Source of the DNA: Pelomyxa schiedti
Taxonomy: Eukaryota; Protista; Evosea
Length of the DNA: 41,635 bases
Direction of reading: 5' to 3'
NCBI GenBank assembly: GCA_020536535.1
Contig: JAHLWZ010000434.1
Coordinates: forward strand, 1 to 41,635
A program made the position numbers and the translations under genes. This document shows positions 3,400 through 24,537 of the stretch, piece after piece. Below the pieces are notes generated by a model. It was not told where the DNA came from and ran no database searches. It was given only the letters and a program-made list of their open reading frames with translations. Position 1 is the stretch's first letter, and every line of letters starts with the position of its first letter.

Positions 3400-6300
3400 A
3401 TGAGCCGAGATAGCGACAAGTTTACAATCGAGGCGCCTGCCGACGACGGCTCGCCGTCGCCGCCCCAACATGACGTCGGCGATGGCCTACCCACCAATGA
3501 CTACCAGATGCGAGAGGCCGCCGACATTGGACAGCATCACCCGCCTCCGCAACCACCTGCGCTCGCTGTGATCACGCTTCCCCTTCCTGCCCCCGCCCCC
3601 GCCCCTCGCCCTCCTAGTTCCGCTTCCGTGTTTGCTCGTTTTATGAAAACTTCTTCTTCTTCGAGGCCGCCACCGCCGCCGCCGCTGCTGCTGATGCTAA
3701 TGCGCTTTCCACTGCCGCCGCGGCGCCGACCGTCTTCCCATCGTCCCGATCAACTTGCGCAAGCACCGACGATGCAGGCGCCGCGGCAGACGGCGAGGAG
3801 GAGGAGGAGGAGGAGGATGGCGGCTGCTACGACGAACAAGAGGAACTCGGGGTGCCACAACGCACGGTGACAGTGCGACCCGGGGACGACATGTGGGAGG
3901 CCTACGACTCGGCCAGCTTCGGGGGCTGTTATACTACGTTGATGTCCGAGGANNNNNNNNNNNNNNNNNNNNNNNNNNNNNNNNNNNNNNNNNNNNNNNN
4001 NNNNNNNNNNNNNNNNNNNNNNNNNNNNNNNNNNNNNNNNNNNNNNNNNNNNACGAACAAGAGGAACTCGGGGTGCCACAACGCACGGTGACAGTGCGAC
4101 CCGGGGACGACATGTGGGAGGCCTACGACTCGGCCAGCTTCGGGGGCTGTTATACTACGTTGATGTCCGAGGACAGGCAGATTTGGGCGGAAAAGAACCG
4201 CGGTGCCGTCGCCCATAAATTTCGCCACCCACACACAGTGTAAGTAAATGCTGATCAATTATACTAGTGGAATTTACATCCCCTTCACAAATTGATTAAC
4301 ACACAGGGTAACTGTCCGCCGCCAATTCCGCCGCAACAAAGTGGATGCGCCTTGGAACACCTTCATTTCCTTCTCTTCTCCTGCGGACGCAGACTTCGCA
4401 TACAACAGATACTGGTTGCTTTACAAGCTGTGTCGTGTTACCGCGCACCCTGGTGCACCGCAGCAGCAACAACCACTACTACAACAACCGCAACAGCAGC
4501 AACTACTACGATTACAACCGCAGCAGCACGGGCTGGGACCTACAAGTTCAGCGGCGGCGACAACGTCTAGTCAGTTCACTAATGACCCTAATGCTGAAGG
4601 AGTGATTGGAGGTGGGACTTATTTCACTACTCACAGAGGTTTCCTCCCTTCATTCCCATTTCACGTTCTTATATCTCTTGTAGCGCCGCTGTTGGGCAAT
4701 TTGCGTGAGGGCATGACGGGAGATATATCCAACAATGTCAACTGGGACATTCTGCCTCATTTTCTGGATGGCAACAATGGGCAAACTGTGGGTGGTGGGG
4801 CTGAGTGCACTGGTTCTATGGCTCCTCTCCACTACGGTCCTATTCAGCAACAGCAGTACCAAGAGCTAGCTCGAATTAACACCACTCCCAATTGTGGATT
4901 GATAACACAGATTGGCGCCACTGACCTTCACCCAACAGAGCAAATTGTTGGAGCCGTTGTTCCTGAGCCAGTTCCCATTCCCCGAGCCACCACCATTCCT
5001 AATGTGCCAGCGATAAGCAGTCTGCAAAACCTGGTAGAATACCTGAGGGGCATATTGAGCCCAGGGCAGTTTTTTGACCGGGCAAGCCTAAATTACACTA
5101 GCAAAGATTTAATTGGCAAGGGCAGTTTTGGCAGAGTGTATAGAGGTTTGCTTTTCATCTCACCAGCATTAACTGACCGATTGCTTACAGCAACAAATGG
5201 AGCCTCAGAAGTAGCCATTAAAGTAATAAACTTGGATCCGTCTATACAGCCCACTCCCGACTTCAATGGCATTGCGAAGGAAGTTCTGAATTTGAGGAAA
5301 GTTTAGTTTCAATTCACCCATAATTTACACATCTTAGATCTGTCGCACATTCAAATCTTGTGTCGTGCATGGGTGCGCTCTATACTGGGGAAAGTAGTAA
5401 CTTGTCCCTCTGCTAACCACACTGTATTTAGGTGTATGTGTGGATGAAAAGGCAAAGGAGTTTTCAATTGTATTCGACAGGATGGAATGCTCCTTGACAG
5501 CACTTCTGGAAAAACAGGATTTACCTACCAAGATGCGAAAGTATATCAAACTGACGTACGAACAGAAATTGGACATTTTCTTGCAGATGGTAATAAGCGT
5601 GCTCTTTCTTTTTTCTAAAATCGGCATAGCTTACAGTTATCGAATTTCTTCACAACACAGCCCACATGGTTCACTGGTTATTGATCAGAAACTCCTTTTT
5701 TCAACTCACTCTGTACAGCGACATCAAATTGGACAACTTCCTACTAGATGCAAATTTGAAGCTGAAGGTTTGGCTACTGAGGTGTTTAGTTCACTCTAAC
5801 CAACTAAATTTAGCTGTGCGACCTGGGATTCGCCAAGTTGATATGGGAGTCCAAGCCAATTGCGTCCGGCACCCGTATATTTGTTCGTTGTTAAGTACTT
5901 AACACTTACTGATGCACAGAGTTATATATGGCGCCGGAGTTGTGGAAACAAAAGGGCTACGGGCCATCTTCCCCGGCCTCGGATATGTGTGTTTAGCCCC
6001 TTTTCATTTCTGCACGGAGTCAACCCTTGGAACAGCTATGCACTGTCCTTCACTATGTACCAGCTGCTATATGAATGGCCCTTGTTCGAAGCTGATGTCA
6101 CGGCAACGGAAGACTCCTTTGTGAACTCTGTTGTCTTAGGTCTGGTGCGCCCCAACCTTTCCAAACAGCCAAAAGACCCAGATATCAAAATTCCGCTTCA
6201 GCCCTGCTTGGTAGGATGACGTGTTTTCTTTATTAGGACTTACACTTGGCAGGTGAAGATGTTCACCCGCTGCTGGCACCCGGACCCTTCTTCTGTGTGT

Positions 6301-6450
6301 TCATTGTTTTTTTGCTCCTTGTTTCATTTTCTTCCACCACAGAGACTCACAGCCACTGAAGCACTTGCATTGGTGAATGAGGCAATTACTCTCTACCAAA
6401 CTAGATCGCAGGGACTCCTCAGCTACTTGGCTTATAAGTTTCATTATTGA
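3400..6450 (+). CDS. Protein kinase (TKL-like, non-RD) with N-terminal RRM-like module; paralog 1, possibly impaired
   Basis: After splicing: IGKGSFGRVY, VAIK, KEVLNLR, HSNLV, MVHCDIKLDNFLL, KLCDLGF, YMAPE, SDIYAL, CWHPDP..RLT. Starts MSRDSDKFTIEAP like the paralog at 13510. The model needs a 38-nt GT..GAG intron (3628-3665) or a frameshift, and a GA donor at 5297. It spans an artefactual gap. Confidence 0.85.
3953..4052. other. Scaffold gap (100 N) with duplicated flanks
   Basis: About 3831-3952 is repeated at 4053-4172, indicating an unmerged contig overlap. Confidence 0.97.
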
Positions 6451-6528
6451 GTAACAATAAAATCTCTCCACTTTCTTGCCAAGAAAATTTTAGTTAGCAA
6501 ATTCAGAGTTACATTTATGTCCAGGTGG

Positions 6529-8334
6529 TTACCTGGTCTTGTTGCGGCCTGCCGTAGGATGATGATACGGCTCAGTTGTGGGGGCTGTGGAATTGGTTTG
6601 TGTGATGGCAGCTATTGTGCCGAGTCCGATGCGGGAGCGGGGGTCCAAGTGTGCGAGAGAGGTGAGGAGTGTTGTTGGAGGTTGTGTGATGGGTTGTATT
6701 GTTTGAGGGGTGTTGGTGGAGGTGATTCTGGGACCACCGGTTGTTCTTCCAGTGGGTTTGTTGGTGCAGTTGCTGCACTTTTGGCTTCTGTTGGTTTGGT
6801 TTCTGGTGCAGATGTGGTGGAAGTGGAAGAAGTGGTTACGCGACTCGTCCAAAAAGCCAGTCATCAATATGGCTGTTGAGCATCGCGTTCTGTGGAATAT
6901 TAGCAATGAATTTGTATGTTATTTCTTAGTTGTCTATGTGGTCCCATGGTACCGGAAAGGAAAAAAGTTCCTCCTTCGTTCTTGGTACTTTGGAAGAGGA
7001 GTAAGGTACTTGCTGCGGGTGTTGTGATGTTGCTTCAATCTGATTGGCACTCAGTGTCCATCTTGAATTTAATTATTATTACTGGTCTTGACCAAAAATA
7101 ACCTGTGGTGTTTCCAGTCACCTCCTTGGGGTTGTCTGTGCTCCATAAAAGGAGAGGACTTCCTTTTGATGATATGGGACAGTGGCAAATCTGGGGAGGA
7201 GTCATGTGGGACAATCACCAAAGAAATTTATACCTGAAGATACAAAACTTCCATACTCTCCGGTGTTCATTTCAAGTGGGTTCAAAGGTGAAAGAGGGTA
7301 TTGCACTGTCCCGGCAAAGGTGTCAGGATTGTATTGTTCCAGATGTTGGTCATATTGATAGAGTCTTTAATAGGTTCACCATCCATGCCCGATGATGTTG
7401 TATCACTAAATTCCCTTATAACTTTGAAAAAGGGAGAATGCGCTTTACCAACTGGATATCTGTTGGGCTGAAGTGAAAGGAGGGTAATTTGGCACGTCAT
7501 CTGTTGCACTGCATTTGAGTCTAATCAATTCTTCCAATTTTCTTTATCCAAGGTGGTGATGGGTACCAATCACGTGAATGTCTTGCAGAAAGCTTGTCTT
7601 TTCTTCTGTTAACTAGTGAGGCGTTAACACAGCCGACAATATAACAACAATTACAATACCGTAATTTTTGTGTTTTTCAGCATTCGTCGACGTAATAATT
7701 GAACTGCAATGGCAGGTCCTTGACGAAACTTGAACTCACACCTCCACAAATACTGAGCTGGCGTTTTCTTGAACACTTTGTCCCAACTTTTTACTGTACC
7801 ACATGCCTGTTGTAAGGATCAAGGAACAAATTGCTAGAAGTAACCAAAGGTATTACTTGAAATAAGGACAAAAGCAATTCAGGGTTTAGTTCTGGTCCTT
7901 CCATCTCCACGTAAACACAGAAAGCTCTTGGCTCTACGGTGGAAGCAGCACACTTTTGGTTTGTTTCTGCCCTTGAACTTCTCGATGCGTTCTGCCGGTC
8001 CAAGTTGGGAGGGCTGGGCCTACTCCTTTTCCTCGAGTCCCTTCTATCCACTCTCCTATCGGCCGGTTCCCTGCTGTCGTGCTGCCTGTCACACTCCTCC
8101 TTCGTCGATCTTTTTGGTTCCAGGCTTCTTCGCTGTTGCAACGCTTGATCCCTCACTCTCTGCTGTTGCTGTTGGTACATGTACCTCCTGTTCTGTAACG
8201 CCTGGCCCTGCCAGCGGCAATAATCCCTCATTGACATCAACATTTCGTGTTGGCTCATCAGATCGCGGTACCGCCTCTCCATTTCCATCTCCATTGTCAT
8301 TGACCTTGAGGCGTCGCGCAATCGCGATCTGCCG
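6529..8334 (-). pseudogene. Decayed duplicate of the RBM25-like gene (16420-18871)
   Basis: Colinear with ~16.6-18.6 kb including introns. It has a TAA stop (6836-6838) right after ..IDDWLFGRVA, deletion of the PWI core, a 1-nt deletion near 7360, and loss of a splice acceptor near 7545. Confidence 0.88.
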
Positions 8335-8434
8335 NNNNNNNNNNNNNNNNNNNNNNNNNNNNNNNNNNNNNNNNNNNNNNNNNNNNNNNNNNNNNNNNNN
8401 NNNNNNNNNNNNNNNNNNNNNNNNNNNNNNNNNN
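8335..8434. other. Scaffold gap (100 N)
   Basis: Run of N; the left flank is nearly identical to ~18540-18641. Confidence 0.99.
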
Positions 8435-8637
8435 GCAACTGGTGGCTCCGTCGCAGTGCCTTTTGGATGTCAGCGTCGCCCCAGTTTGTTCCTGTACCCT
8501 GTTTTCGTAGTACCAACTTTTCTCCCGCAGAAATTTTCTCTGGGGCCGCTCTCTTGCTGCTTGGCAATTAATTACATTACGAAGAAAGAATTCGCTCTCG
8601 TTTTCGGGACACTGTTGTGTCCACTGTCGCTGGTCGT

Positions 8638-9249
8638 ATTGTGCGGCAAAGGTGGGGTTGTTTCAGCGGAACAGTTGGACGTCCAATGTGGTGTTGGCGT
8701 GCACCCAGCCTCGAATGGACGAGGCCGTGAAGCAACTGGCAGAAGGTAACCCAACTGCAGCACCCTCCGCTCTTTTCAACTCATTAAAGGTTATACCCCC
8801 GTTGTAACCCTTCTTGTACTGACCTTGATGTACACAGCGCATACCATGTTGAAATGGGGAGGTATGGCACAGATGAGGTTTGGTTTGAGGATCTTGTTGA
8901 ACCTGCAGCCGTCAGAGCTGACCATCCTAGAATGTGGAAAGATGCAAGGAAAAAGAGTGAGGCTGTTTGGCTGGGTTCACCACATCCGCACACAGAAGAG
9001 TGTGACTTTTGTGGACTTGAGAGATGGACAGGGCTTCTTGCAAGTAAATTCAACCATTTGAAAAAAATCCCACTCATCCTTTCAGTGTGTTTTACCTGGC
9101 CCCGAGTTGCCAGTGAAGCACTGCTTGCTCAGCTCCTCAGGGACTCTGTGGAACTTACAGGCGTTCTCAACCATCTTCCAGAAGGGGAAGCGAGCAGCTG
9201 GCGTAGCTACTGCACCACCTCTTGAGTTGATAGTCGATTGGTGGCGAAC
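8638..9249 (+). pseudogene. Decayed partial duplicate of the asparaginyl-tRNA synthetase gene
   Basis: Matches ~19715-20509 ([20 protein letters not shown] ... [32 protein letters not shown] ... LELIVDWWR) with introns retained, several deletions and frameshifts, and no catalytic domain. Confidence 0.9.
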
Positions 9250-9774
9250 TGCCAACAAATCACTGAAGAAGTTTCAGGAAGGTACCCACCTAAGCACAAA
9301 GTGCGCAGAGGATCTTTCTCAACAGAAATGTGCTCGCCATGGAATTTGCAAGTATTGATTGGAAAGTGGGCAAATTTCCATCCCCGATTTCATTGAAGGT
9401 ATTATTTTTCTTTTCTTTTTCTGAGTCTCCTCCTTCTTCTTCCTCTTAGTTCATGAAAATGTTTAATGAAATGAAAAAGAAGATATTCTATTGTGGAACC
9501 ACTTCATCATCGGTAACTGGTTGCCAGATTCCACCTTGGAAAGCTGCGCTTGGTGTTCAGTTCTATCGACTCGGCCTTATTTCGCACCCAAATTCTTCCA
9601 GTTCATCAAGTCCCAATACAGAATCAGACACCGGTTCTCGTCAAGTCTCTGATGGCCAAAAGTTCTTCCGCGGCATCAGAGGAAGCATAGCTAGCTAGGG
9701 AGATGTGCAAAAAGAAAGTCTATGTAAGCCATCCTTCACTTACTCCTCAAACTGAACACTCCATTATTTCTTAG

Positions 9775-9996
9775 ATGAACCGGCTGTTCCGGCAAATGGA
9801 TGTGGATTGTTCCGGAACCATCACCGCTGATGAACTGAAGGCCGGCCTGAAAGCCCTGTCCATCCTGTGGATATACCCTCAGTGAGCATCTCAAAACGGG
9901 TATGTACCAATAGCACCAATTCCGCACTCACAAACCAACAGCTCATGAATCCATGGTGAAGAGTTCAAAGCTGCTCGGCTGCCGGATCGCCTCTAA
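9775..9996 (+). pseudogene. EF-hand (calmodulin/CDPK-like) gene fragment, degenerate
   Basis: After an intron (9724-9774) it reads MNRLFRQMDVDCSGTITADELKAGLKAL, a canonical DxDxSGxIxxxE loop. It then frameshifts, with remnants KRLMN...EEFKAA of a second EF-hand. There are upstream in-frame stops. Confidence 0.6.
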
Positions 9997-10104
9997 TTCA
10001 TTCACACCACCACATGACAATCTTTGTGGCCTACGTTTTTTTGTTTGCTGTATCACCCTCTTCAGGTTTTGTTTTATTCACGAAAAAGTCTTTTATAGTC
10101 CATT

Positions 10105-13100
10105 TTATAATCCTAGTCCTTTCTTCATGCGGCCAAAGAAGCCGGGAGCCAGTTCGGGTGTTGGAGTTGGGGTGCAATTAACCTTCCTCACTGCGTTAAG
10201 TGCCATTGCCTCCATCACTGCATCATGCGCTTTGGTGGCTGTCAATCTCTGTGAGTGGATTAAATAAAACAAGGAACAACAAAAGAGTATACAAAATAAG
10301 GGTCCGTGTGCCAGCATTGTTGAAACATTGTCACCTGCTCTATTGATCAGTAATAATAAAGAAATAAGATTTCTTACCAAACATGGCGGTATCGGCACGG
10401 GTGAATTTGGGTCGGGAATATCCTTGGAAATATCGGGGTGCTGGGCTAATACAATTCTATTGTACATAATGCTGTCTAGACGCTCAGAACGGTCAAACGA
10501 GGGTTGCTGATAGAGCAGCTCCCACATAGTGAACGCCATGGCCCACCTGTTACGAGGGTGGAGAAATCCGGAAAAGAAAAGGGCTAAACACATGTCGGAT
10601 TCTGGTGAAGATGGCTGGTAGTCGGTGTTTTTCAATAATTCCGGCGCCATATACGGTGCTGTGCGTCAGTCAGTGTTAAGTACCTAACTAAGTGACATAC
10701 CTGTGCCTGATGCTCGTCCCATAGACTCCGAAATCAACTTGACGAAGCCTAGATCGCAGAGCTAAGTGTTGGTCGTTAAGGTGAGATTAACACAACCCAG
10801 CCATCATACCTTTACAGTCAGATTTGCATCAATTAAGAAATTATCTGGCTTGAAATCACTGTAAAGACAAGAAAGGGGGAGTGAGAAGTTGTCGTAATCT
10901 GCTTAGGAAGTACCAGTGCACCATGTGTGCCTGTTCATGAAGATAAATGACAACTCTAAGCTATGGTGATTTAGAAGGAAAAAAAACAGCACACGGCCAT
11001 TACCATTTGATCCAAGATTGACAATTTATCTCCATATGCCAAGTGCCTATACTTAAGCATTTGTGGTGGTAATTTCTGAGGGTCGGAGATAAAGGCTGCC
11101 AAGGAGCATTCCATATGTTCAAATATAATTGAAAACTCCTTTGTACTTTCATCTAGGCAGACGCCTAATATAGTGTGATGCAATCAGTAACTACTATAAA
11201 AAACACACCAATAAAGCTGACTAAATTAGGATGAGACAGAGACCTGAGGTTGTGTAAGACTACTTGGTGAATTGAAACAAAACATACCGGTGGTTCATAA
11301 CCTCCTTCTCTAAGATGCCTAAGTTCCCATCTTGGTCATAGGTCTTCCTTATGTCTATTACTTTAACAGCTGTGTTTGTGGCTCCAAATGTAGCTGTAAG
11401 AAAACAGTTAGTTCTCGCTGGCTAGAAACAAAGAACTAACCTTTATAAACTCGACCAAAGCTCCCTGCCCCAATTAGGTCCTTATCAGTGTATTTTAGGT
11501 CACGCCGTTCTACAAAATGAGGCGGAAGCAATACGGTGTTCCACAGGTATTGCATAAGTTGTTGTATTTCATTGCTGAGAACTGTTGCAGCAGGGAAGGT
11601 TGGAATGGAAACTACTACTGGCTCAGGACAACCAGTGCCATTACCCAGAGCCTGCTCATTGAGCTCATCCATAAAATGATGCAGCCCGTCCCAGTTGACT
11701 TGGGTTGAGCTATCAGCCTCAGTGTGGTATACATCATGTTCGGCCGTAGTGCTCTTGCGTGGTTTTTCCAAATTTGCCAACCGCGTCGCTACAAAGAGAT
11801 AAGAAATAAGATTGAATAAAGAAGAGAAAACCTTTGGGAACAGTGGGATATGTACCATGTTCAAGCGGGCCTTCACCATTACCCTCGTTTGTGGACTTTA
11901 GGCTCTCCAAGGGTTCTTGTATGAAAACGTGTGATAGGTATTCCTCTTCCAGAGTCTGCGGCGTACTTGTAGTGGTAGTACTAGTAGAGGTAGTTGCTGA
12001 CGTTGTAGTAGTCGTAGTACTAGTACTAGTTGCCGCTGTTGCACTTGGGACAGCAGACGTCGTTTTTGCCGCCGCTGAACTGGGTTGTTGCAGCCCCTGC
12101 CGCAGTTGCTGCGTGGCACCACCACCACCACCAGGGGGAGCAGGAGGAAGAACAGGAGCAGGAGCAGGTGCCGCGGCGGTGACATAACGCAGCTGGTAAC
12201 GGTCACCGCATATTCTGTACGCAACATCCGCGGCCTGTTGGTTATTGAATGCAATGAAGACGTTCTTCGAGCCGTCCGTTTGGCGTACGACGCACACTCT
12301 GTGTTGCGTGAATCAACGGAGATGTAAAGAATTAGTAATCAATTAGATTTAGATCAAAATTTGTTTGATATATCCTATGTGAGCACTTTTACACCCCGGT
12401 TTTTGCCCGTTTTAGCAACAATTTTCTTCTTCAATCCGTCTCTCTGTGGGGTTAAAACCGTCATCACAGAACCCTTTTCTTCTTGTTTCCTCTGGCACAA
12501 GTGTTAAAACCGTTATTCGTCATAGCAAGATCCTGCGGTTCGAGTTCCACTTCAAGCATTCATTTTTTGTAGAATGGTAGAGGATTCCTGACCTAGCAAT
12601 AAAACACAAGGAGATTGGCACCCCTGCCACTTTTTTTTCCAGGTTTTTCTTCAACTCCAAGAATTTTCTTCTTTTTTTGTTGATAACTCGGTTATTTTTT
12701 TTGTCTATTTGCGTCCGTCTGGAAAATTTTCTGGCACACATGGATTTGGAACCTCCACCCTTTCTGCTGATGAACGAGAGTTTTACCCCTTGCGCAACAC
12801 CGAAATAACACTTAGAAAAGACCGAGTTGAGAAGAAAATTGTTGCTAAAACGGGCAAAAACTGGGTGTAAAAGTGCTCACCAGGACTGTGCGGGATATTC
12901 AAATGAATGGGCCCACTCACGCGCTCTTCCCGCGAAACCGGTTCATGACCTGGTCTTCACCCAGTCTGTACAGCCCGGGGCCGCCCATGGACAACAACGT
13001 CGGACGGGTGCCTCCCTTGCTGCATCTGTTGTAGGGCCCCAGCATCGTCGCAGCGTTTTGAGGTATGACCATCGGCGGCAGAAGCAGTGCGGGCGCTCCT

Positions 13101-13510
13101 TGCTTCTTCTTGTTCTTGTTCTTGTTCTTCTTTGCTCTGCCCTTGCCCCAATAGTCACAGGTCGCAGTCAAAGTAGGAGGAGGCTGCGACGACGACGAAG
13201 CGGCGGCTGACAACGTGGAAAGCGCAGCAGAGGCGGCCGTCCCGGGGTAAGAGGCAGCAGGGGCCAGGCCACGGAAAGGAGAGGGAGCAGGACCAGGCGC
13301 GGGAGCAAGCGCGTTGGCACGAGCGTGATCGGGATGCGTGATTACGGGGGTAGGGGGTGGCGGCAGCCCTGGGGGCTCCTGCCGTGGTTTCTGCTCGTCC
13401 GAGGCGTCCAGCATGGACCAGTCGTTGGTTGGGTGGGAGTCATCAACAGGCGGCGACGGCGAATCCTCGGTCGGCGCCTCGATTGTGTAACGGTCGCTAT
13501 CTCGGCTCAT
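10105..13510 (-). CDS. Protein kinase (TKL-like, non-RD) with N-terminal RRM-like module; paralog 2, apparently intact
   Basis: Spliced motifs: IGAGSFGRVYK, TAVK, EKEVMNHRSLSHPNLVSFIG, MVHCDFKPDNFLI, KLCDLGF, YMAPE, SDMWAM, CWHTDP..RLT, ending FFGRMKKGLGL*. The introns traced are GT-AG and positionally conserved with paralog 1. An alternative ATG lies at 13525. Confidence 0.9.
12359..12908. mobile_element. Non-autonomous foldback/MITE-like element inside kinase intron 1
   Basis: Near-perfect ~50-bp inverted repeat (12379-12430 vs 12830-12880, GTGAGCACTTTTACACCC..TTTTTGCCCGTTTTAGCAACAATTTTCTTCT) with weaker extensions on both sides. There is no coding capacity. It inflates the intron to 622 nt versus 67 nt in the paralog. 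No TSD identified. Confidence 0.75.
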
Positions 13511-16419: not shown

Positions 16420-18871
16420 CTATGAGTGGAAAGGACTGTCATCGCAGGAGGGGGGTTTTGGGCTATCAGTTGTTTTGTGGTGGTTGGTTGCTGTTAGTGG
16501 CACTTGGTTGTGTTTATTGTCCACTTGTGTATGGTGGTTAACTGTGTGCCTAGTGTGGGATGGGGATTCTGGCCCGGCACTGTGGCATTGGTTCTGTGAG
16601 TCAGTGGGATGTTGCTGTGGCTGCTGTTCCACAGGTTCCGCTGTGGTAGCCGGTGTAAGAGCGGGAGGGAGAGTGGGTGCTGTTGCCGTTACTATTTTTA
16701 TAGTTGTTTCTAGTAGTGAGGTGGGTTGTATTGTGAGGGGTGTTTCTGGTGGTGTTGGTGGAGGGGATTCTGGGACCGCCGGTAGTTGTTCTTCAAGTGG
16801 TTTCGTTACTGTGGTGACTACACTTTCCGTTTCCGTTGGTTTGGTTGCTGGTGCAGATGGGGGAGTGGGTGCAGTTGTGATGGGTGGACTCTCTAGAGAC
16901 TCCGTCACAAGCAGTTTCCAAAGCTCCATAACAAGGTCACCGGCGATTTTGGAGTCCTCCAACACTAGTGCTAGTCTCCTCTCCAAATCAGATGGTGTGA
17001 CGTGGGACTGAAGGTTTTTCAGTATGAAGTCCTGGAGAATTGAGTCCGGCTCTCCCATTAGGTCTGCTACTCGCCCAAAAAGCCAGTCATCAATATGGCC
17101 GTTGAGAATCGCGTTCTGTGGAATTTCAGAAATGAAACGTTTGTTGTTTCTTACGTTGTCTATGTGGTCCCATGGTATCTGAAAGGAAAAGAGTTCCTCC
17201 TTAGTTCTTGGTACTTTAGAAGAGGAGTCGGGTTCTTTCTGTGGATGTTGTGATATCGGTTCAATCTGATTGGCACTCAGTGTCCATCTTGAGTTTAATT
17301 ATTATTACTGGACTAGACCAAAAATAACCTGTGGTGTTTCCCTTCTCCTCTTTGGGCTACTGGGTCGCCTGTGCTCCATAAAAGGAGAGGACTTCCTTTT
17401 AATGATATGGGATAGTTGCAAATCTTGGGAGGAGTCATGTGGGCCATTCACAACAAAATTTATACCTGAAGATACAAAACTTCCATACTCTCCGGTGTTC
17501 ATTTCAAGTGGGTTCAAAGGTGAAAGAGGGTATTGCAGTGCCCTTGTAAAGGTGTCAGGATCGTATTGTTCCAGATGCCGGTCATATTGATCGGAGTCAT
17601 TAATAGGGACACTGTCCATGCCTGATGGTAATGTAGGATCACTATAAATTCCCTTATCTTTTGAAAAAGGGAGACAGCAGTTTACCAACTGGATATCTCT
17701 TGGGCTGAAGTGAAAGGAGGGTGAAACTTTGGCTCGTCGTTTGTTTCATTGCTTTTGAGTCTAATCAATTCTTCCAGTTTTCTTGCACAGTCCATGAACT
17801 GGTCCTTTTCTGAATTTTATTAGTGTCTTTCCAAGGCAGTGACGGATACCAATCACGTGAATATCTTGCAGAAAGCTTGTGGTTTCTTCTTCTGATAACT
17901 AGTGAAGAGTTAACACAGTAGACAGAATAACAACAATACCGTAATTTTGGTGTTTTTCAGCATTCTTCGATGCAACAACTGGAATGCTATGGCAGGTCCT
18001 TGACGAAACTTGAACTCACACCTCCACAAATACTGAGCTGTTGTTTTCTTGAACACTCTGTCCCAGCTTTTTACTGTACCACATACCTGTTGTAAGGATC
18101 ACAAAGGAACAAATTACTAGAGGTAACCAAAGGCATTACTTGAAGTAAGGACAAAAGCAATTCAGGGTTTAGTTCTGGTCCTTCCATCGCCACGTAAACC
18201 AAGAAAGCGCTTGGCTCTCCAGTGGAAGATGTACACTTTTGGTTTGTTTCTGCCCTTGAACTTCTCGCTTCGCTCTGTGTAGTGCTGGGCTTACTCCTTG
18301 CGTCACCACTGCCTTCCGAACTCCTTTTTCTTGAGTCCCTTCTATCCACTCTCCTATCAGCAACCGGTTCCCTGCTGTCGTACTGCCTCTCACACTCCTC
18401 CTTCGTAGGTCTTTTTGGTTCCTGGTTTCTTCGCGATTGCAACGCCTGATCCCTCATTCTCTGCTGTTGCTGTTGGTACATGTACCTCCTGTTCTGTAAC
18501 GCCTGGCCCTGCCAGCGGCAATAATCCCTCATCCTCATTGACATCAGCATTTCGTGTTGGCTCATCAGATCGCGGTACCGCCTCTCCATTTCCATCTCCA
18601 TTGTCATTGACCTTGAGGCGTCGCGCAATCGCGATCTGCCGCCACCACAGCCACCGCCACCGCCACTGCCCCCGCGATCGTACGAATCGCCGCCGTTCGT
18701 CCGCGGTGGATCTAGATCTTGGGTGCGACGAGAACTGGTGTTTGTGCTGGTGACGCTATTGCGCGGTGGAGATAAAGACGGAGACGACACCGGAGATGGG
18801 GAGTATGACCTCAAGCCGGATCTGCGACCAACGGCGTCCCCCACGGCACGACTAGGCGACACCCGCGACAT
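16420..18871 (-). CDS. RBM25/Snu71-like splicing factor (RS/RD-rich N-terminus, divergent RRM, C-terminal PWI domain)
   Basis: Spliced RRM LVYVAMEGPELNPELLLSLLQ|VCGTVKSWDRVF...CEFKFRQGPAIAFQLLH resembles the RBM25 RRM. VPRTKEELFSFQIPWDHID|NAILNGHIDDWLFGRVADLMGEPDSILQDFILKNL...LALVLEDSKIAGDLVMELWKLLVTE matches the RBM25-type PWI. All introns are GT-AG. Confidence 0.85.
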
Positions 18872-19221
18872 TCTCTTTGCTGTTTTTTTTTTTTTTTTCG
18901 TTTCAACAAGATCTCCCTGATCAGTTGTCACCGCAAACTTCAAGATTACTCTCAACAAAAGCTGAGGAGTGACTGCTTCACATTGGCAGGTACTGGAGTT
19001 TATCCCAGAATCTGAGAGTGATAACTGTGATGGAATTCCGAGGTATTGAGTATTTGAAGGGTGAGGACATGACGTTGAAGCTTCAGAGAGGAATGTCCCA
19101 TTTCCTCGTGCTTTTGGGGATGGTTCGGCACACGGATTCCTCATCGAGATTCTCAGGAATGTCAAAACGATCATTTTTTGTTTTTCGTAATCTATCTATC
19201 TTTTGTTCTTTTGAAGGCACG

Positions 19222-19232
19222 CGTGCGGATCT
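19222..19232 (+). promoter_or_regulatory. Candidate proximal motif CGTGCGGATCT (also at 26581-26591)
   Basis: The exact 11-mer lies 8 nt before the AsnRS ATG and 28 nt before the PH-gene ATG. A reverse-strand GCGGATCT lies at 26459-26466. Function is inferred only. Confidence 0.25.
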
Positions 19233-19240
19233 ACGACCAA

Positions 19241-21844
19241 ATGGCTACAGAGTCAACAGCGACACCAACAGCGACGACAGCGGCGACTGCGACACCCGCG
19301 GTCAACACTGCGGAACACAGGCCGATATTGGAGGCGTTGCATCTCGACAAAAAGCGCATCGACGACACTCTGCGCAACCCAAAACTCACGTCCGATCTCG
19401 TGGAGATCGCCCAAGCGGCAAAGGTCGACGCCGCGACCGGCGTTCCCAAAGAAATCGGCAATTTGCTCTACTCGATCGCGACGGTGAGCGCCTTTTGCGT
19501 TTTTCTTTTCTCTTTTCTTTTTTGCTCACCTTTTTTTTTTTTGGACAGGAGTACCCAGCAACAGGCACAAAGGAAGCCAGAACGATAGTACTATTGCACA
19601 TCGTTGCAGGGAAAATAACCTCCAAAGCCCAACTTCTGGTGTGTGCCACTTTCTGCTTTGTTGTATCCTGTATTCTGGTTGCCAGGACTGACGAGCCTAT
19701 TAGGCAGCGTTTGAATTGTGCGGCAAAGGTGGGGTTGTTTCAGCGGAACAGTTGGACGTCCAATGTGGTGTTGGTGTGAACCTCACCCAGCCTCAAATGG
19801 ATGAGGCTGTGAAGCAACTGGCAGAAGCTAACCCAACTGCAGCACCCTCTGCTCTTTTCAAGCTCATTAAAGGTTATATTCCCGTTGTAACCCTTCTTGT
19901 ACTGACCTTGATGCACACAGCGCATACCACGTTGAAATGGGGAGACATGGCTTTCCTGAAGAAGTGTGCTGATGCACATGCAAAAGTTGCCGAGCAGCAC
20001 GCCCCTGCCAAAGCGAAACCTACTGCAGCTTCAACCACTACTACTGCAGCCGCACCCAAAGCAAAAGCGCCTGCAACCGTGTGTTTTGCCTTTTGGCCAC
20101 TTACATTCTCATCTTTGGGATAGATGAGGTTTGAGGATCTTGTTGAAGATCCCGCTCTCCCTGCAGCCGTCAGAGCTGACATCCTAGAATGTGGAAAGAT
20201 GCAAGGAAAAAGAGTGAGGGTGTTCGGTTGGGTTCACCACATCCGCACACAGAAGAGTGTGACTTTTGTGGACTTGAGAGATGGACAGGGCTTCTTGCAA
20301 GTAAATTCAACCATATGAAAAAAATTTCCACTAATCCTTTCAGTGTGTTTTAACTGGGCCCCGAGTTGCCAGTGAAGCACTGCTTGCTCAGCTCCTCAGG
20401 GAGTCCTCTGTGGAACTTACAGGCGTTCTCAACCATCTTCCAGAAGGGAAGCGAGCAGCTGGTGTGGCCACTGCACAGCCTCTTGAGTTGATAGTCGATT
20501 GGTGGCGAATTGTTGGGAAGTCTGATGTTGATTTGGAAAAGATTGTGCAACCAGACTCAACTGTACCCCAAAGATTTGATCAAAGACGTAATTTTCCACT
20601 TTCCTCGTCATTTTCCACTTATATCAACTTTGACAGATATTATTGTACGAGGAGAAAGGACATCAGCAGTACTAAAGCTCCGATCAGTGGTCATGCAGTG
20701 TTTCCGAGAGTATCTCTTCGCCCACAAATTCACCGAGGTGACACCCCCCACAATTGTTCAGACACAGTGTGAAGGTGGCCGTATGACACATTTTCCTTTT
20801 CTCATTTCTTCATGCAGGTGGGTCGGATCTTTTTGAGATGAACTATTTTGGGGAAAAAGCTTATATGACCCAATCCAGTCAGCTGTACTTGGAAACCGTG
20901 ATACCAGCTGTTGGACCAACTTTTTGTGTTGTAAGTTACCAATACTCGAATGTGCCACTTTAACTTTATTTTCAAAGCTCCCTTCCTTCCGAGCAGAGCA
21001 AAGTAGGACTCCCCGTCACCTTGCTGAATACACACATATGGAGGTTTCCTAACTGCACCTATGTACAAGGAATTAACACATTAACAGGCTGAAATGCCGT
21101 TCATTGTATTTGAAGATCTCCTTGCTCACCTTGAAGATACCATTTGCACTGTATGTGCGGCGGTACTGGAACGAGCACCACAACTCGTTAAGTACCTCAA
21201 CCCAAACTTCGAGGTGCCAGTCCGACCATTCAAGAGGATGACCTACAGAGAAGCAATCAACTTCTGCAATGAGCACCATGTAAAATACACCCCCTTATCC
21301 TTCCTCTAACCTCATTTGTGAACCAGATCATCAACACCGAGACTCAACTGCCATTCGAGTACGGCCAGGATATCACAGAGAAGCCGGAACGTGAAATGTG
21401 CGCCCTGATTGGAAAACCCATCTTCCTGATGCGGTTCCCTGTTGAGATGAAAGCCTTCTACATGAAGCGACCCGCCGACGACCGCTCCGTCACCGAAAGC
21501 GTTGATGTGGTATGCGCATTCCCTCCGTCACAAACAAATTCCACACACAGTACCCCACCACAAACACCCCAGACTAACCTCAATGACAGCTCATGCCCGG
21601 CGTCGGGGAGATTGTTGGAGGATCCATGCGTATTGATGACTACGATGAGCTGATGGCGGCCTACGCCCGCAACAAGCTGGACCCCTCGCCGTACTACTGG
21701 TTCACGGACCAGAGGAAGTACGGCACATGCCCCCACGGTGGCTACGGCCTTGGCGTGGAGAGGTTCCTGATGTGGATGACAGCAGACCCGCACATCCGCA
21801 ACATGTGCCTGTACCCAAGGCACATACAAAGGTGCACCCCTTAG
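19241..21844 (+). CDS. NARS1: Asparagine--tRNA ligase, eukaryotic cytosolic type, with GlnRS-type N-terminal domain
   Basis: OB fold [26 protein letters not shown]; [18 protein letters not shown]; motif 2 [21 protein letters not shown]; PVEMKAFYM; [21 protein letters not shown]; motif 3 [25 protein letters not shown]; ends [11 protein letters not shown]. First introns at 19484-19548 and 19639-19703. Confidence 0.97.
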
Positions 21845-22089
21845 ATAGCCCAAACCCACCAGAGCCAAACACACAACACAACCCATTCTTTTGGGAAAAA
21901 CACCAGAACAACAAACAACAATAAATACAATTGAGTCTGTTTGCTGTGTACCCCAGAGTGCCCCCACAGTTTCTGTAATTTTTTTTTGATCAAAACAATC
22001 AAAACAAATAAACTACCGGATCAAAACCGAATCGGTAGAACAACCCCTGCACGGCCCCACAACACCCCAGAAACTGGTAGCATCCCACA

Positions 22090-24537
22090 ATGTCGTCTGA
22101 CATACCTCTTGTTGAGCACAAAGGGGCGTGGTCGAAGGAGCCGTCGTCGGTCTCGTGGCGTGGGCGGTGTACAAGGCGAAAAGTTGCTTTTGCTAGCGTT
22201 GTGGCATTCGCGGTGGTGGTTTTGGTTATAATTGCCCTCGGTGTGTTATCTATTTTTGTCTTTCTCCCTTTTCAAATTCAATGCATTCATACTTTTTTTT
22301 TGCTGTTGCTGCTATTACTGTTGTTGTTTTTGTAAACGAAACTTGTCAATTGTAATTGCGGTTTAGTCCTGGTTGCTGTGAGAAACAAGAACGATGATGT
22401 GCACTTGGACGAAGATATTAATGTTGACAACATTGTTGAGGAACTTGGGCAACTTGAAGATATTGCCGAGCAATACGGCAATTGCCGAACTGACTTTAGT
22501 GGGTACGAATTCCGGCATATTTTTATGTCACTAATGTGGAAACCAAAAAAATAAGGGGATATGAAGCATCACTCGAATATCTGGAAGAGCAGTTGGCAGG
22601 GTCTGGCCTTATTGTTTGGAGGAGTCCAGTATTTTTCTCCCTCAGAATGCTCAACACAACAAGCGCCCTTAAAATGTCTCTGGTGTCACCTGTGAAGGTG
22701 GACTTCATACGCAATACCGACTGGAGGATTTTGGGAGGCAGTATCAGTAGCAACGTCTATGGAGCCCCCTTGTGCAATGTTTCTGGTCCTGGTTGTACTG
22801 ACGCAGATTATACCGGTAAGGTTACTGTTTGCAGTCTTCTACTCTGACTAATGACTAGGTTGCCCAAACGGCGCTGTCGCTGTTATTACTGACCCCCTCA
22901 ACGTCTGCTCTTGGAGTGAAAAGGTTGCTGTAGCTGTCAAGTACGAATATTTCCGGCTTGTTTTCTTTTCTAATGATCGAAGCAACTCTGCTGCAATGAT
23001 AATGGGCTATAGCACCGACTATCCAACCTCCCCACCAAGGTACACTACTTTAGAAAGGATAAGCTAATCCACGATTAGGTATTATTTTTCGGCGTACAAC
23101 CACCCAATTCCCGGCATTACTGTAACTGGCAAGTATGTAACGCCCCTTATTTTCCCATGTGGTAAAAGAAAGCAGTTTGGCGCAAATGTTACTTGCCTAT
23201 GGTGTCAGTGCTACAGTGAACGTTGAGGTTCTCCTATTCACCTTCCACTTTTTCTTTTTCCAACATCTTTAGTTCCTCATTGAAACAACTATCGTATTCA
23301 CAGAAAATTTGATTGCAGAAACCCCAACTGTATGGGTGTTTTCATTGCCCCTACTGATTGCCAATTAGGGAAATTCAGATAATATAGTGACAGTGGGGGC
23401 CCATTTGGATTCTACTTCCGAGGTTGATAGTTTCTCTATCTTCTTTCCTCCCATTTTCCGGTTTACCAGGGTTTGAAGTATGGTAATTAGGGTCCAGGTA
23501 TTAATGACAACGGGAGCGGAAGTATGACTCTGTTAGAGCTAGCTCTGGTTGTATCGAGAACAAAGTAGTTACCAAAAGGTCACTACTGAATTGGGCTAAC
23601 TATGTCTTGAGGATGTCCGATTGGATTAAAAACAAGATACAGTTTATGTGGTGGGCTGCAGAAGAGTACGGTCTCGTTGGGTCAGTACTGTACTTGCAGG
23701 TATTTTATTTCCTTTTCTTGAAAAGAATGACTAAAATGATAGGTTTTCCTCATAGTACCTCAATGCAACCGACAGAGCCAAAATTGTTTGCAACCTGAAT
23801 ATGGATATGACAGGAAGCCCAAATTACATTTTGGAGATAATAAATGGATCTACTGTAACCCAGCCTACAGCGCAATATGGAAGTATACAAATCCAAGTAC
23901 TCCTTTAAATATCTGCCTTCTAATTTTTAATTGTTGTAGAAATTGTATTCCGATTACCTGGAATCGCAGGATTTCCATTACAAACTGATTAACACCCATG
24001 GTGCTTCCGATTATTATCCCTTCAATTACTATGGCATTCCGGCCAACTCGATTGCAGGAGGGGCAGGTAATTTCCATTTTATATATTATATTTCACCCTC
24101 AAATATCTCCTTAGGAGAACTCAAAACCGCTGATGACCGCGACTTATTTGGCGGTGTATGCAATGTTGCAGCCGATCCCTGTTATCATCAGTATTCATAA
24201 AACTTACTTCATTACATACTAACCACAACAGGGTATGCGATACCATGGACAATTTCTCCACCGAGTGCCTTGAGCTAATTGGTATTGGTTCCATTTCTTA
24301 TCTCCAGAATTTGTTCCCCTTTCACTCATTGAAAAAACAGCCAAGGCGAATGCGCATGTAACACAAGAGCTTGCACAAAACGAAAATGTTAGGGACTTAC
24401 TGTTTGGAGGCGCAGCCCAAACACAGCAACAACAACCAATTGATTTACAGGACTTCCTAGACACCGTGGCACAGAACAACAAGCATTACTCTATCCTCTC
24501 CATAGAACCACTCCATGTAACAGATATACTATCTTGA
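22090..24537 (+). CDS. M28 family aminopeptidase with PA domain and N-terminal membrane anchor
   Basis: Hydrophobic VAFASVVAFAVVVLVIIALGVLV. Zn-ligand motifs VGAHLDS, GPGINDNGSGS, WWAAEEYGLVGS, NLNMDMTGSPN, ASDYYPF, DPCYHQ. PA-like segment GPGCTDADY...CSWSEKV. More than a dozen short introns. Confidence 0.93.

What the first reader, a model, noticed from the sequence alone, without database searches (positions are those of the whole stretch)
19241..19990. Class II AsnRS carrying the class I GlnRS N-terminal (YqeY/GatB-like) tRNA-binding domain
Seen: splicing exons 1-4 gives [99 protein letters not shown], fused in frame through an A/T/P/K linker to a complete AsnRS. Established: eukaryotic GlnRS begins with a non-specific RNA-binding domain (Pfam tRNA_synt_1c_R1) with the same landmarks in the same order (ETLKN, GxLLY, KI..QLxAA, CGVGV, LKWAD). 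That domain is structurally related to the tRNA-binding tail of GatB, the amidotransferase subunit that acts on both tRNA-Gln and tRNA-Asn. Animal and fungal AsnRS normally has an unrelated N-extension. Inference: this is a cross-class domain graft that may boost tRNA-Asn binding or dock AsnRS into a synthetase complex. I do not know of a description of this architecture.
Basis: partly seen in the sequence, partly recalled or inferred. Interest (0 to 1): 0.85.

Follow-up and report, generated by a model that had tools for sequence, protein, structure and literature searches.

The report
Amoeba AsnRS carrying GlnRS-type N-terminal domain
This is a real, transcribed gene for the amoeba Pelomyxa schiedti's asparaginyl-tRNA synthetase, which carries at its front the tRNA-binding domain better known from glutaminyl-tRNA synthetase; the layout is standard across amoebozoans and already published for trypanosomatid parasites, so it is genuine but not new.

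Summary
Twelve exons (19241-21844, + strand) encode a 675-aa protein. It is identical to the deposited NCBI protein "asparagine-tRNA ligase [Pelomyxa schiedti]" (P0042).

- **Domains.** Residues 30-176 match Pfam tRNA_synt_1c_R1 over its whole length (88 bits). An AlphaFold model of this part finds only the GlnRS N-terminal domains in the PDB. A Lys/Ala/Pro/Thr linker follows, then a complete AsnRS (TIGR00457 above its cut-off).
- **Fusion.** One RNA contig, seen in two runs, removes the 45-nt intron that joins the linker to the AsnRS. A metagenomic orthologue has Gly where Pelomyxa has the Met that could otherwise have started a separate AsnRS.
- **Novelty fails.** 48 of the 120 best AsnRS hits have the same architecture. 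Every one that carries an organism label except one is amoebozoan (dictyostelids, Mastigamoeba, Mastigella and others); the exception is a cluster member labelled as a glaucophyte. Trypanosomatid AsnRS with this domain was tabulated in 2012 and described in 2021.
- **What is modestly new.** The domain is widespread in Amoebozoa. Pelomyxa's own GlnRS keeps its copy, unlike trypanosomatid GlnRS. The GVG hinge and the Trp needed for tRNA binding in yeast GlnRS are conserved.
- **Function.** The likeliest role, a tRNA-binding enhancer acting in cis, is inferred and not tested.

Interest is low to moderate.

The parts
19241..19483 (+). Exon 1 (aa 1-81). It holds a T/A-rich low-complexity start (aa 1-25) and then the first helices of the R1 domain (…[21 protein letters not shown]…GNLLYSIAT).
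   Evidence: PF04558 32.6 bits, profile 7-57; 100% identical to P0042 aa 1-81. The junction to exon 2 is not covered by RNA; it is supported by L005, which lacks this intron.
19549..19638 (+). Exon 2 (aa 82-111), the middle of the R1 helical subdomain.
   Evidence: RNA contig joint 19638>19704 (run X1).
19704..19872 (+). Exon 3 (aa 112-168, last codon split). It contains the hinge motif CGVGV (G133-V134-G135) between the two subdomains.
   Evidence: PF04558 24.5 bits, profile 96-134; in alignment A3, G133 is invariant and G135 nearly invariant; joint 19872>19921 in X1 and X2.
19921..20078 (+). Exon 4 (aa 168-220). It holds the end of the R1 domain (LKWGD, W174; the Pfam match ends at aa 176, about 19946), one further helix to about aa 194, then the Ala/Pro/Lys/Thr-rich linker.
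   Evidence: AlphaFold helices up to residue 194, then pLDDT 57-74; W174 is nearly invariant.
20079..20123 (+). The 45-nt GT..AG intron that joins the linker to the AsnRS. It ends in TAG and is directly followed by ATG.
   Evidence: Removed in RNA contigs of runs X1 and X2, with 160 matching letters on each side and no mismatches.
20124..20300 (+). Exon 5 (aa 221-279): end of the linker and start of the OB-fold anticodon-binding domain.
   Evidence: PF01336; the orthologue reads GNLEDL where Pelomyxa reads MRFEDL.
20344..21844 (+). Exons 6-12: 20344-20587, 20637-20774, 20818-20930, 20978-21043, 21088-21279, 21327-21509 and 21590-21844 (including the TAG stop). They hold the rest of the OB fold and the class II catalytic domain (aa 355-668).
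   Evidence: All six joints are seen in RNA contigs of X1-X3; PF00152 245 bits; TIGR00457 393 bits against a cut-off of 342.6.

Best explanation
One gene encodes what appears to be the genome's only AsnRS of this type, in Pelomyxa schiedti (Archamoebae, Amoebozoa). The protein has four parts: a short low-complexity start, a two-subdomain helical domain homologous to the N-terminal tRNA-binding domain of eukaryotic GlnRS (Pfam R1), a flexible Lys/Ala/Pro/Thr linker, and a standard class IIb AsnRS (OB-fold anticodon binder plus catalytic core). This much is shown: the gene structure, the single spliced mRNA, the identity of both domains, and the fact that the same architecture is the usual form of AsnRS across Amoebozoa. 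This is inferred: by analogy with yeast Gln4, the domain binds tRNA in cis through hinge closure between its two subdomains. It would thereby raise the affinity of AsnRS for tRNA-Asn. That is the role played by Lys-rich N-terminal extensions in other eukaryotic class IIb synthetases.
For: - **Gene model and transcript.**
- **Identity with the deposited protein.** It is identical to the NCBI protein 'asparagine-tRNA ligase [Pelomyxa schiedti]', whose contig length of 41635 equals the window length.
- **R1 domain.** PF04558 scores 88.4 bits over the full profile. The profile of 47 such domains hits human GlnRS 4r3z at E=7e-51 and the yeast Gln4 NTD 3tl4 at 8e-37. The AlphaFold model has pLDDT 88. 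The only four PDB matches with E<=0.001 are 3tl4 (TM 0.66 by target) and human GlnRS.
- **AsnRS.** TIGR00457 is above its cut-off. The best PDB hits are AsnRS enzymes: 3m4p at 6.5e-167 and human NARS1 at 3e-155. AspRS is far weaker, at 5e-53 or worse.
- **Conservation of the fusion.** The orthologous locus L005 is collinear over aa 17-675 and has no Met at the junction. An intronless 657-aa ORF in L018 has the same architecture. 48 of the top 120 hits carry R1, from Dictyostelia, Archamoebae, Variosea, Protosporangiida and Discosea. In the AsnRS-core tree, carriers and non-carriers are split by one branch with SH-aLRT 98.
- **Functional residues.** In Gln4, changing G112-V113-G114 or W160 cuts tRNA affinity 4-12 fold (PMC3333875). 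The equivalents G133, G135 and W174 are invariant or nearly invariant in the AsnRS domains.
- **Single copy.** No second AsnRS of this type was found in the genome.
Against: - No biochemical datum exists for any AsnRS-borne copy of this domain.
- The domain evolves much faster than the core: 37% against 71% identity with Mastigella.
- In Pelomyxa and its nearest relatives it has lost a segment, and it lacks the LGPK start of R2 that dictyostelids keep.
- The crystallised Entamoeba AsnRS chain (3m4p, 456 aa) has no such domain. An archamoeba may therefore manage without it.
- Parrot et al. 2021 suggest the domain may act differently on AsnRS than on GlnRS.
- The exon 1/2 junction is not covered by the RNA contigs that were laid.
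Confidence: 0.75

Rival explanations
1. The domain mainly serves as a protein-protein docking module. It would tether AsnRS to a multi-synthetase complex or another partner rather than bind tRNA.
For: In the human multisynthetase complex the GlnRS NTD is needed to stabilise the association of other synthetases (as cited in PMC8319005). The same genome keeps an NTD on its GlnRS, so two synthetases carry one kind of module.
Against: AsnRS was not found in the T. brucei complex despite carrying this domain (PMC8319005). The residues conserved in the AsnRS copies are the hinge GVG and the Trp, which in Gln4 affect tRNA binding. No complex prediction or interaction datum was obtained here.
Confidence: 0.18
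2. These are two adjacent genes wrongly joined: a stand-alone R1 protein ending at the TAG at 20121-20123, and a minimal AsnRS starting at the ATG at 20124.
For: The intron's last three bases are TAG in the upstream frame, and the next codon is ATG. An AsnRS starting there would have a bacterial-like length.
Against: One RNA contig in each of two runs spans exons 2-6 (X1) or 3-6 (X2) with the 45-nt GT..AG intron removed. The orthologue has Gly at that position. Intronless homologues encode one continuous protein. In the alignment of 47 homologues the Pelomyxa Met lines up with non-Met residues.
Confidence: 0.02
3. The domain is a decaying relic without function in Pelomyxa.
For: Lower conservation than the core, an internal deletion relative to dictyostelids, and its absence from the crystallised Entamoeba enzyme.
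Against: The frame is intact across four exons. The Pfam match covers the whole profile. The fold is confidently predicted (pLDDT above 90 for residues 21-190). Key hinge residues are kept across Amoebozoa.
Confidence: 0.05

Closest known systems
Trypanosomatid AsnRS with a GlnRS-appended NTD (Parrot et al. 2021, PMC8319005; L. major LmjF.34.2340 in Gowri et al. 2012, PMC3532385)
   Same: An N-terminal extension of about 200-235 aa, homologous to the eukaryotic GlnRS NTD, placed in front of a cytosolic-type AsnRS. Its function is untested in both.
   Different: In trypanosomatids the GlnRS has lost its NTD; here GlnRS keeps it. Trypanosomatid AsnRS also has a 17-aa insertion between motifs 2 and 3, and in some Leishmania a further 220-aa extension; neither was examined here. 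Whether the two lineages share one origin of the fusion could not be tested, because no trypanosomatid sequence was reachable with these tools.
Amoebozoan AsnRS in public databases (Dictyostelium purpureum and D. citrinum, Tieghemostelium, Heterostelium, Acytostelium, Cavenderia, Mastigamoeba balamuthi, Mastigella eilhardi, Stygamoeba and others)
   Same: The same three Pfam domains in the same order and a similar length (647-705 aa). The core tree places Pelomyxa next to Mastigella at 71% identity.
   Different: Pelomyxa and its close relatives lack a segment of about 8-10 residues inside the second subdomain and the LGPK motif that follows LKWAD. Pelomyxa adds a T/A-rich 25-aa start.
Eukaryotic GlnRS N-terminal domain (yeast Gln4 NTD, PDB 3tl4; human QARS1, 4ye6/4r3z)
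   Same: The fold with two helical subdomains, the conserved GVG hinge and the Trp that packs against it.
   Different: Here it is attached to a class II enzyme for another amino acid. Sequence identity is 19-25% to the solved structures and about 26% to the same genome's GlnRS domain. Pfam R2 is not detected.
GatB / GatE tail and YqeY domains of the tRNA-dependent amidotransferases
   Same: A similar overall shape. ESM-Atlas GatB clusters score TM 0.49 over 173 residues, and GatB_Yqey proteins TM 0.43/0.50. The GatE tail scores E=0.06 in the profile search. GatCAB acts on both tRNA-Gln and tRNA-Asn; that point is established knowledge and was not tested here.
   Different: There is no significant sequence match to PF02637. 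Foldseek matches to YqeY and GatB in the PDB are non-significant, at E of 1.8 to 3.9.
Animal AsnRS N-terminal extension (Pfam PF20917)
   Same: The same position in front of the OB fold of cytosolic AsnRS.
   Different: It is an unrelated domain family. None of the 48 R1 carriers has PF20917, and no PF20917 carrier has R1.

Membership tests
Asparaginyl-tRNA synthetase (class IIb; NCBIfam TIGR00457 asnS equivalog) | Whole-protein score above the curated equivalog cut-off | tested here: met
   393.1 bits against a cut-off of 342.6, residues 240-674, profile 8-454 of 455. The AspRS and LysRS models all fall below their cut-offs.
Asparaginyl-tRNA synthetase (class IIb; NCBIfam TIGR00457 asnS equivalog) | OB-fold anticodon-binding domain followed by the class II D/K/N catalytic core | tested here: met
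   PF01336 at residues 251-331 and PF00152 at residues 355-668, 245 bits.
Asparaginyl-tRNA synthetase (class IIb; NCBIfam TIGR00457 asnS equivalog) | Closer to solved AsnRS than to AspRS | tested here: met
   3m4p scores 6.5e-167 and 5xix 3.1e-155, against a best AspRS score of 5e-53.
Asparaginyl-tRNA synthetase (class IIb; NCBIfam TIGR00457 asnS equivalog) | Charges tRNA-Asn with asparagine | not testable with these tools
   Needs an aminoacylation assay.
GlnRS N-terminal domain (Pfam PF04558 tRNA_synt_1c_R1) | Score above the gathering cut-off with coverage of the whole profile | tested here: met
   88.4 bits against 28.6, profile 7-161 of 162. Exon 1 alone already scores 32.6 bits.
GlnRS N-terminal domain (Pfam PF04558 tRNA_synt_1c_R1) | Two helical subdomains with the fold of the Gln4 NTD | tested here: met
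   The model has pLDDT 88.1 and ten helices. 3tl4 is the top hit (E=7e-6, 179 aligned columns, TM 0.66 by target). The only other significant hits are human GlnRS.
GlnRS N-terminal domain (Pfam PF04558 tRNA_synt_1c_R1) | Conserved GVG hinge and the Trp that contacts it (Gln4 G112-V113-G114 and W160) | tested here: met
   The equivalents are G133-V134-G135 and W174. Across 47 AsnRS-borne domains, G133 is invariant and G135 and W174 are at least 90% conserved (roles from PMC3333875).
GlnRS N-terminal domain (Pfam PF04558 tRNA_synt_1c_R1) | Followed by R2 (PF04557), as in GlnRS | tested here: not met
   P0042 has no PF04557 hit at E<=0.1. Stygamoeba AsnRS has a sub-threshold partial hit (20.4 bits, profile 1-43 of 94).
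GlnRS N-terminal domain (Pfam PF04558 tRNA_synt_1c_R1) | Binds tRNA | not testable with these tools
   Needs gel-shift or kinetic assays.
GatB_Yqey / YqeY (PF02637, PF09424) | Sequence match to the family model | tested here: not met
   No such Pfam hit at E<=0.1. The GatE tail reaches only E=0.06 in the profile search.
GatB_Yqey / YqeY (PF02637, PF09424) | Shared fold | tested here: inconclusive
   Atlas GatB cluster TM 0.49 and GatB_Yqey cluster TM 0.43/0.50. PDB YqeY and GatB hits have E of 1.8 to 3.9.
Trypanosomatid-type NTD-AsnRS (PMC8319005) | GlnRS-like NTD appended to AsnRS | tested here: met
Trypanosomatid-type NTD-AsnRS (PMC8319005) | The same organism's GlnRS lacks the NTD | tested here: not met
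   The own GlnRS at G000:C838 carries R1 (83.4 bits), followed by LGPK and the HIGH motif.
Trypanosomatid-type NTD-AsnRS (PMC8319005) | 17-aa insertion between motifs 2 and 3 | not tested

The most novel reading that the evidence does not exclude
The GatB-like tRNA sensor was present on both amide-amino-acid synthetases (GlnRS and AsnRS) early in eukaryote evolution, mirroring GatB's dual action on tRNA-Gln and tRNA-Asn. On this reading Amoebozoa and Euglenozoa retain the ancestral AsnRS form. Animals and red algae, the non-carriers seen here, replaced it with the unrelated PF20917 extension, or in Rhodosorus carry no extension domain at all. The domain would then read a feature shared by tRNA-Asn and tRNA-Gln rather than act as a non-specific RNA binder.
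Probability: 0.12. Interest if true: 0.6.

Novelty: new member of a known kind. Interest (0 to 1): 0.27.

Why it matters
The case shows that the GlnRS-type N-terminal domain on AsnRS is more than a trypanosomatid oddity: it is the normal form of the enzyme across a whole eukaryotic supergroup. It also coexists there with a GlnRS that keeps its own copy. That argues for an old duplication of the domain rather than a swap. It also offers tractable organisms, Dictyostelium above all, for testing what the domain does on a class II enzyme. For the scan, the lesson is that the fusion is genuine, while the claim of an undescribed architecture does not hold.

Tried and rejected
- **Exon 1 against 1.84 billion representatives.** This returned only a 108-aa fragment (P0001) and a low-complexity hit. 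P0001 nevertheless led to the orthologous locus L005.
- **ESM-Atlas feature searches.** Neither P0001 nor the P0042 NTD gave a usable hit.
- **Word-based search with P0042 residues 1-200.** It found only P0042 itself, so the R1 relatives could not be ranked that way.
- **R1-only tree.** It used 48 AsnRS domains and 3 GlnRS domains. It was unresolved: the three GlnRS rows did not group, and no well-supported branch decided the matter. One versus several origins of the AsnRS-borne domain stays open.
- **Paper searches.** Searches for 'tRNA_synt_1c_R1' and for AsnRS + Dictyostelium + GlnRS found nothing. The absence of a paper on the amoebozoan enzymes holds only for the library that was searched.
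- **Two-gene model.** A stand-alone R1 protein plus a minimal AsnRS starting at the ATG at 20124 was considered and rejected.
- **Second AsnRS in the genome.** C4:49258-50430 is only 24-47% identical to this AsnRS and is more likely another class IIb enzyme. The other matches are truncated copies.
- **Joining exons.** Exons were searched one by one by reference until the deposited protein P0042, identical to the 12-exon model, came back from the database. It was then used by id.
Full report
**What is in the sequence**

The region 19241-21844 on the + strand is a eukaryotic gene with short GT..AG introns of 43-80 nt. I derived a 12-exon model from the sequence:

| Exon | Coordinates |
|---|---|
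| 1 | 19241-19483 |
| 2 | 19549-19638 |
| 3 | 19704-19872 |
| 4 | 19921-20078 |
| 5 | 20124-20300 |
| 6 | 20344-20587 |
| 7 | 20637-20774 |
| 8 | 20818-20930 |
| 9 | 20978-21043 |
| 10 | 21088-21279 |
| 11 | 21327-21509 |
| 12 | 21590-21844 |

The coding length is 2025 nt, or 675 aa.

Exon 1 alone passes the Pfam gathering cut-off for tRNA_synt_1c_R1 (PF04558: 32.6 against 28.6 bits, profile 7-57). Exon 3 matches profile positions 96-134 at 24.5 bits. Exon 5 matches the OB-fold anticodon-binding domain.

**Is it one gene?**

The fusion depends on a 45-nt intron (20079-20123). That intron ends in TAG in the upstream frame and is followed at once by ATG. A two-gene reading was therefore a serious rival.

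- Four single-cell RNA-seq runs hold the locus; all come from one sample and one study, labelled 'protist metagenome'.
- Laying their contigs on 18800-22300 gave one contig in X1 covering exons 2-6 and one in X2 covering exons 3-6. In both, the 45-nt intron is removed exactly, with no mismatches and 160 matching letters on each side. All downstream joints are also seen.
- The only significant hit of exon 1 among 1.84 billion representative proteins was a 108-aa fragment, P0001. Its contig, a 132-kb ENA metagenome contig (L005), carries a collinear orthologue of the whole gene, aligned over aa 17-675.
- In L005 the exon 1/2 intron is absent, which supports the one junction that the RNA contigs do not cover.
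- In L005 the exon after the linker intron begins GNLEDL, where Pelomyxa has MRFEDL. No start codon is conserved at that position.

**Identity of the organism and the protein**

A metagenome scan with the R1 exons found an intronless 657-aa ORF (L018) with PF04558 (165 bits), PF01336 and PF00152. Using it and its dictyostelid relatives as a profile returned P0042, among others. P0042 is 'asparagine-tRNA ligase [Pelomyxa schiedti]', 675 aa, on a contig of 41635 bases. That is exactly the length of this window.

tblastn lays P0042 onto the exon model along its whole length. It is 100% identical to exon 1 and exon 6, where the HSPs coincide with the exons. The other HSPs run through in-frame introns and so show lower overall figures. 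The window is therefore Pelomyxa schiedti (Archamoebae), and the gene is already deposited with this model. From here on I used P0042 by id.

**The two halves**

- **N-terminal domain.** P0042 gives PF04558 at 88.4 bits over residues 30-176 (profile 7-161 of 162), PF01336 at 251-331 and PF00152 at 355-668. A profile of 47 AsnRS-borne N-terminal regions (A3) hits human GlnRS (4r3z, 4ye6) at about E=1e-50 and yeast Gln4 (4h3s, 3tl4) at about E=1e-37. It touches the GatE tail only at E=0.06.
- **Predicted fold.** An AlphaFold model of residues 1-235 has mean pLDDT 88. Residues 21-190 are above 90. There are ten helices, and the linker after residue 194 has low confidence. Foldseek finds four PDB entries with E<=0.001. 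All are GlnRS N-terminal domains, and 3tl4 is first (179 aligned columns, TM 0.66 by target). YqeY and GatB appear only at E of 1.8 to 3.9. Against ESM-Atlas clusters the order is GlnRS (TM 0.56), GatB (0.49), then GatB_Yqey proteins (0.43/0.50). The domain is therefore a GlnRS-type NTD. The GatB/YqeY relation is visible in shape but not significant here.
- **R2.** Pfam R2 is not detected in Pelomyxa.
- **C-terminal enzyme.** It passes the NCBIfam asnS equivalog cut-off (393 against 342.6 bits). It is far closer to solved AsnRS than to AspRS.

**How common is the architecture?**

Of the 120 best AsnRS hits, 48 carry the domain. Those with an organism label are listed below.

| Group | Species |
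|---|---|
| Dictyostelids | Dictyostelium citrinum, D. purpureum, Tieghemostelium, Heterostelium, Acytostelium, Cavenderia, Synstelium |
| Archamoebae | Mastigamoeba balamuthi, Mastigella eilhardi |
| Other amoebozoans | Ceratiomyxa, Clastostelium, Phalansterium, Vermistella, Stygamoeba |

All of these are Amoebozoa. One cluster member is labelled as the glaucophyte Gloeochaete (MMETSP1089), which I did not follow up. Animal and red-algal AsnRS in the same list carry PF20917 or, in Rhodosorus, no N-terminal extension domain.

I built a maximum-likelihood tree on the last 440 residues only, so the domain itself played no part in it. It splits carriers from non-carriers on a single branch (SH-aLRT 98) and puts Pelomyxa next to Mastigella at 71% identity. 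This fits vertical descent within Amoebozoa. The sample is limited to the best 120 hits of a dictyostelid profile.

**Literature**

- Gowri et al. [quoted passage not shown]
- Parrot et al. 2021 (PMC8319005) describe an extension of about 235 aa on trypanosomatid AsnRS, homologous to the GlnRS-appended NTD. They note that trypanosomatid GlnRS lacks the NTD and that AsnRS was not found in the T. brucei multisynthetase complex. They suggest the domain may have another function there.
- I found no paper in the searchable library on the amoebozoan enzymes.

**The genome's own GlnRS**

PF04558 searched in the genome gives its strongest hit on contig C838, at 83.4 bits. That locus encodes R1, the LKWADGK…LGPK continuation and the HIGH motif of a class I GlnRS. 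Pelomyxa therefore has the domain on both enzymes, unlike trypanosomatids. The two copies are only about 26% identical, so this is no recent graft. An R1-only tree with three GlnRS sequences was unresolved.

**Likely function**

Grant et al. (PMC3333875) showed three things for yeast Gln4:

- Losing the NTD impairs growth and reduces the enzyme's complementarity for tRNA-Gln.
- The two subdomains resemble GatB's helical and tail domains.
- Mutating the hinge G112-V113-G114, or W160, lowers tRNA affinity 4-12 fold.

In the 47 AsnRS-borne domains the equivalent G133 is invariant, and G135 and W174 are at least 90% conserved. The best-supported mechanism is therefore a tRNA-binding domain acting in cis on a flexible Lys-rich tether. 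This is inference, and nothing here tests it. A docking role in a synthetase complex is the main rival.

**Verdict**

The observation and the domain assignment are right, and the fusion is real and expressed. The architecture is already published for trypanosomatids. It is present in public databases for many amoebozoans, including this very protein. What is modestly new:

- the breadth of the architecture across Amoebozoa;
- its coexistence with an NTD-bearing GlnRS;
- the conservation of the hinge residues.

**Limits**

- The RNA runs are all one sample, kept as contigs rather than raw reads.
- The exon 1/2 junction rests on the orthologue and on the deposited model.
- No trypanosomatid sequence could be fetched, so a common origin with that lineage is untested.

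Noticed in passing
window 7269-8334 and 8638-9251; also G000:C1113:13921-14507, C3049:548-979, C1003:29486-29629: There are truncated, intron-containing copies of the AsnRS 5' part, 82-92% identical in DNA. They correspond to 19715-19951 plus 20128-20512. The window and C1113 copies, and by their boundaries the C3049 copy, lack 19952-20127, which holds the linker and its intron. The C1003 fragment is broken differently. The window copy lies beside an 83% copy of the upstream neighbour (17501-18641 matches 7269-8334). The reading frames are broken, so these look like pseudogene fragments of one segmental duplication family. They lie inside the 3400-13510 stretch that another first-stage note reads as a kinase pair (s1-620849).
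   Followed up: partly
window 9249-9278: In runs X1 and X2, an RNA contig that follows the AsnRS sequence up to 20509 continues with letters that match 9249-9278 exactly. That is the sequence just beyond the truncated copy. The copy is therefore itself represented in the RNA libraries, or else it creates a branch in the assembly graph.
   Followed up: partly
P0124 (cluster of P0029): One R1-AsnRS cluster member is labelled Gloeochaete wittrockiana (MMETSP1089), a glaucophyte. It sits in a cluster whose relatives on the tree are amoebozoan-like. This is either contamination of that transcriptome or an occurrence outside Amoebozoa.
   Followed up: no
PDB 3m4p: The crystallised Entamoeba histolytica AsnRS chain is 456 aa and aligns only to residues 236-675 of the Pelomyxa enzyme. 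This parasitic archamoeba may have lost the N-terminal domain, or the construct may have been truncated.
   Followed up: no
P0009 and P0012: Trichuris AsnRS entries are about 1100 aa, twice the usual length. They score very high against the profile although only about 70% of the query is covered. They may be tandem or fused gene models.
   Followed up: no
window around 3900-4050 and 8000-8400: Runs of N (translated as X in ORFs) interrupt the window, which shows scaffold gaps inside the duplicated region.
   Followed up: no
L019 1-2330: A metagenomic GlnRS with R1 is 46% identical to P0001 over 56 residues. Its gene is split into two overlapping ORFs (4-1275 and 1143-2270), which suggests an intron or a frameshift.
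   Followed up: no
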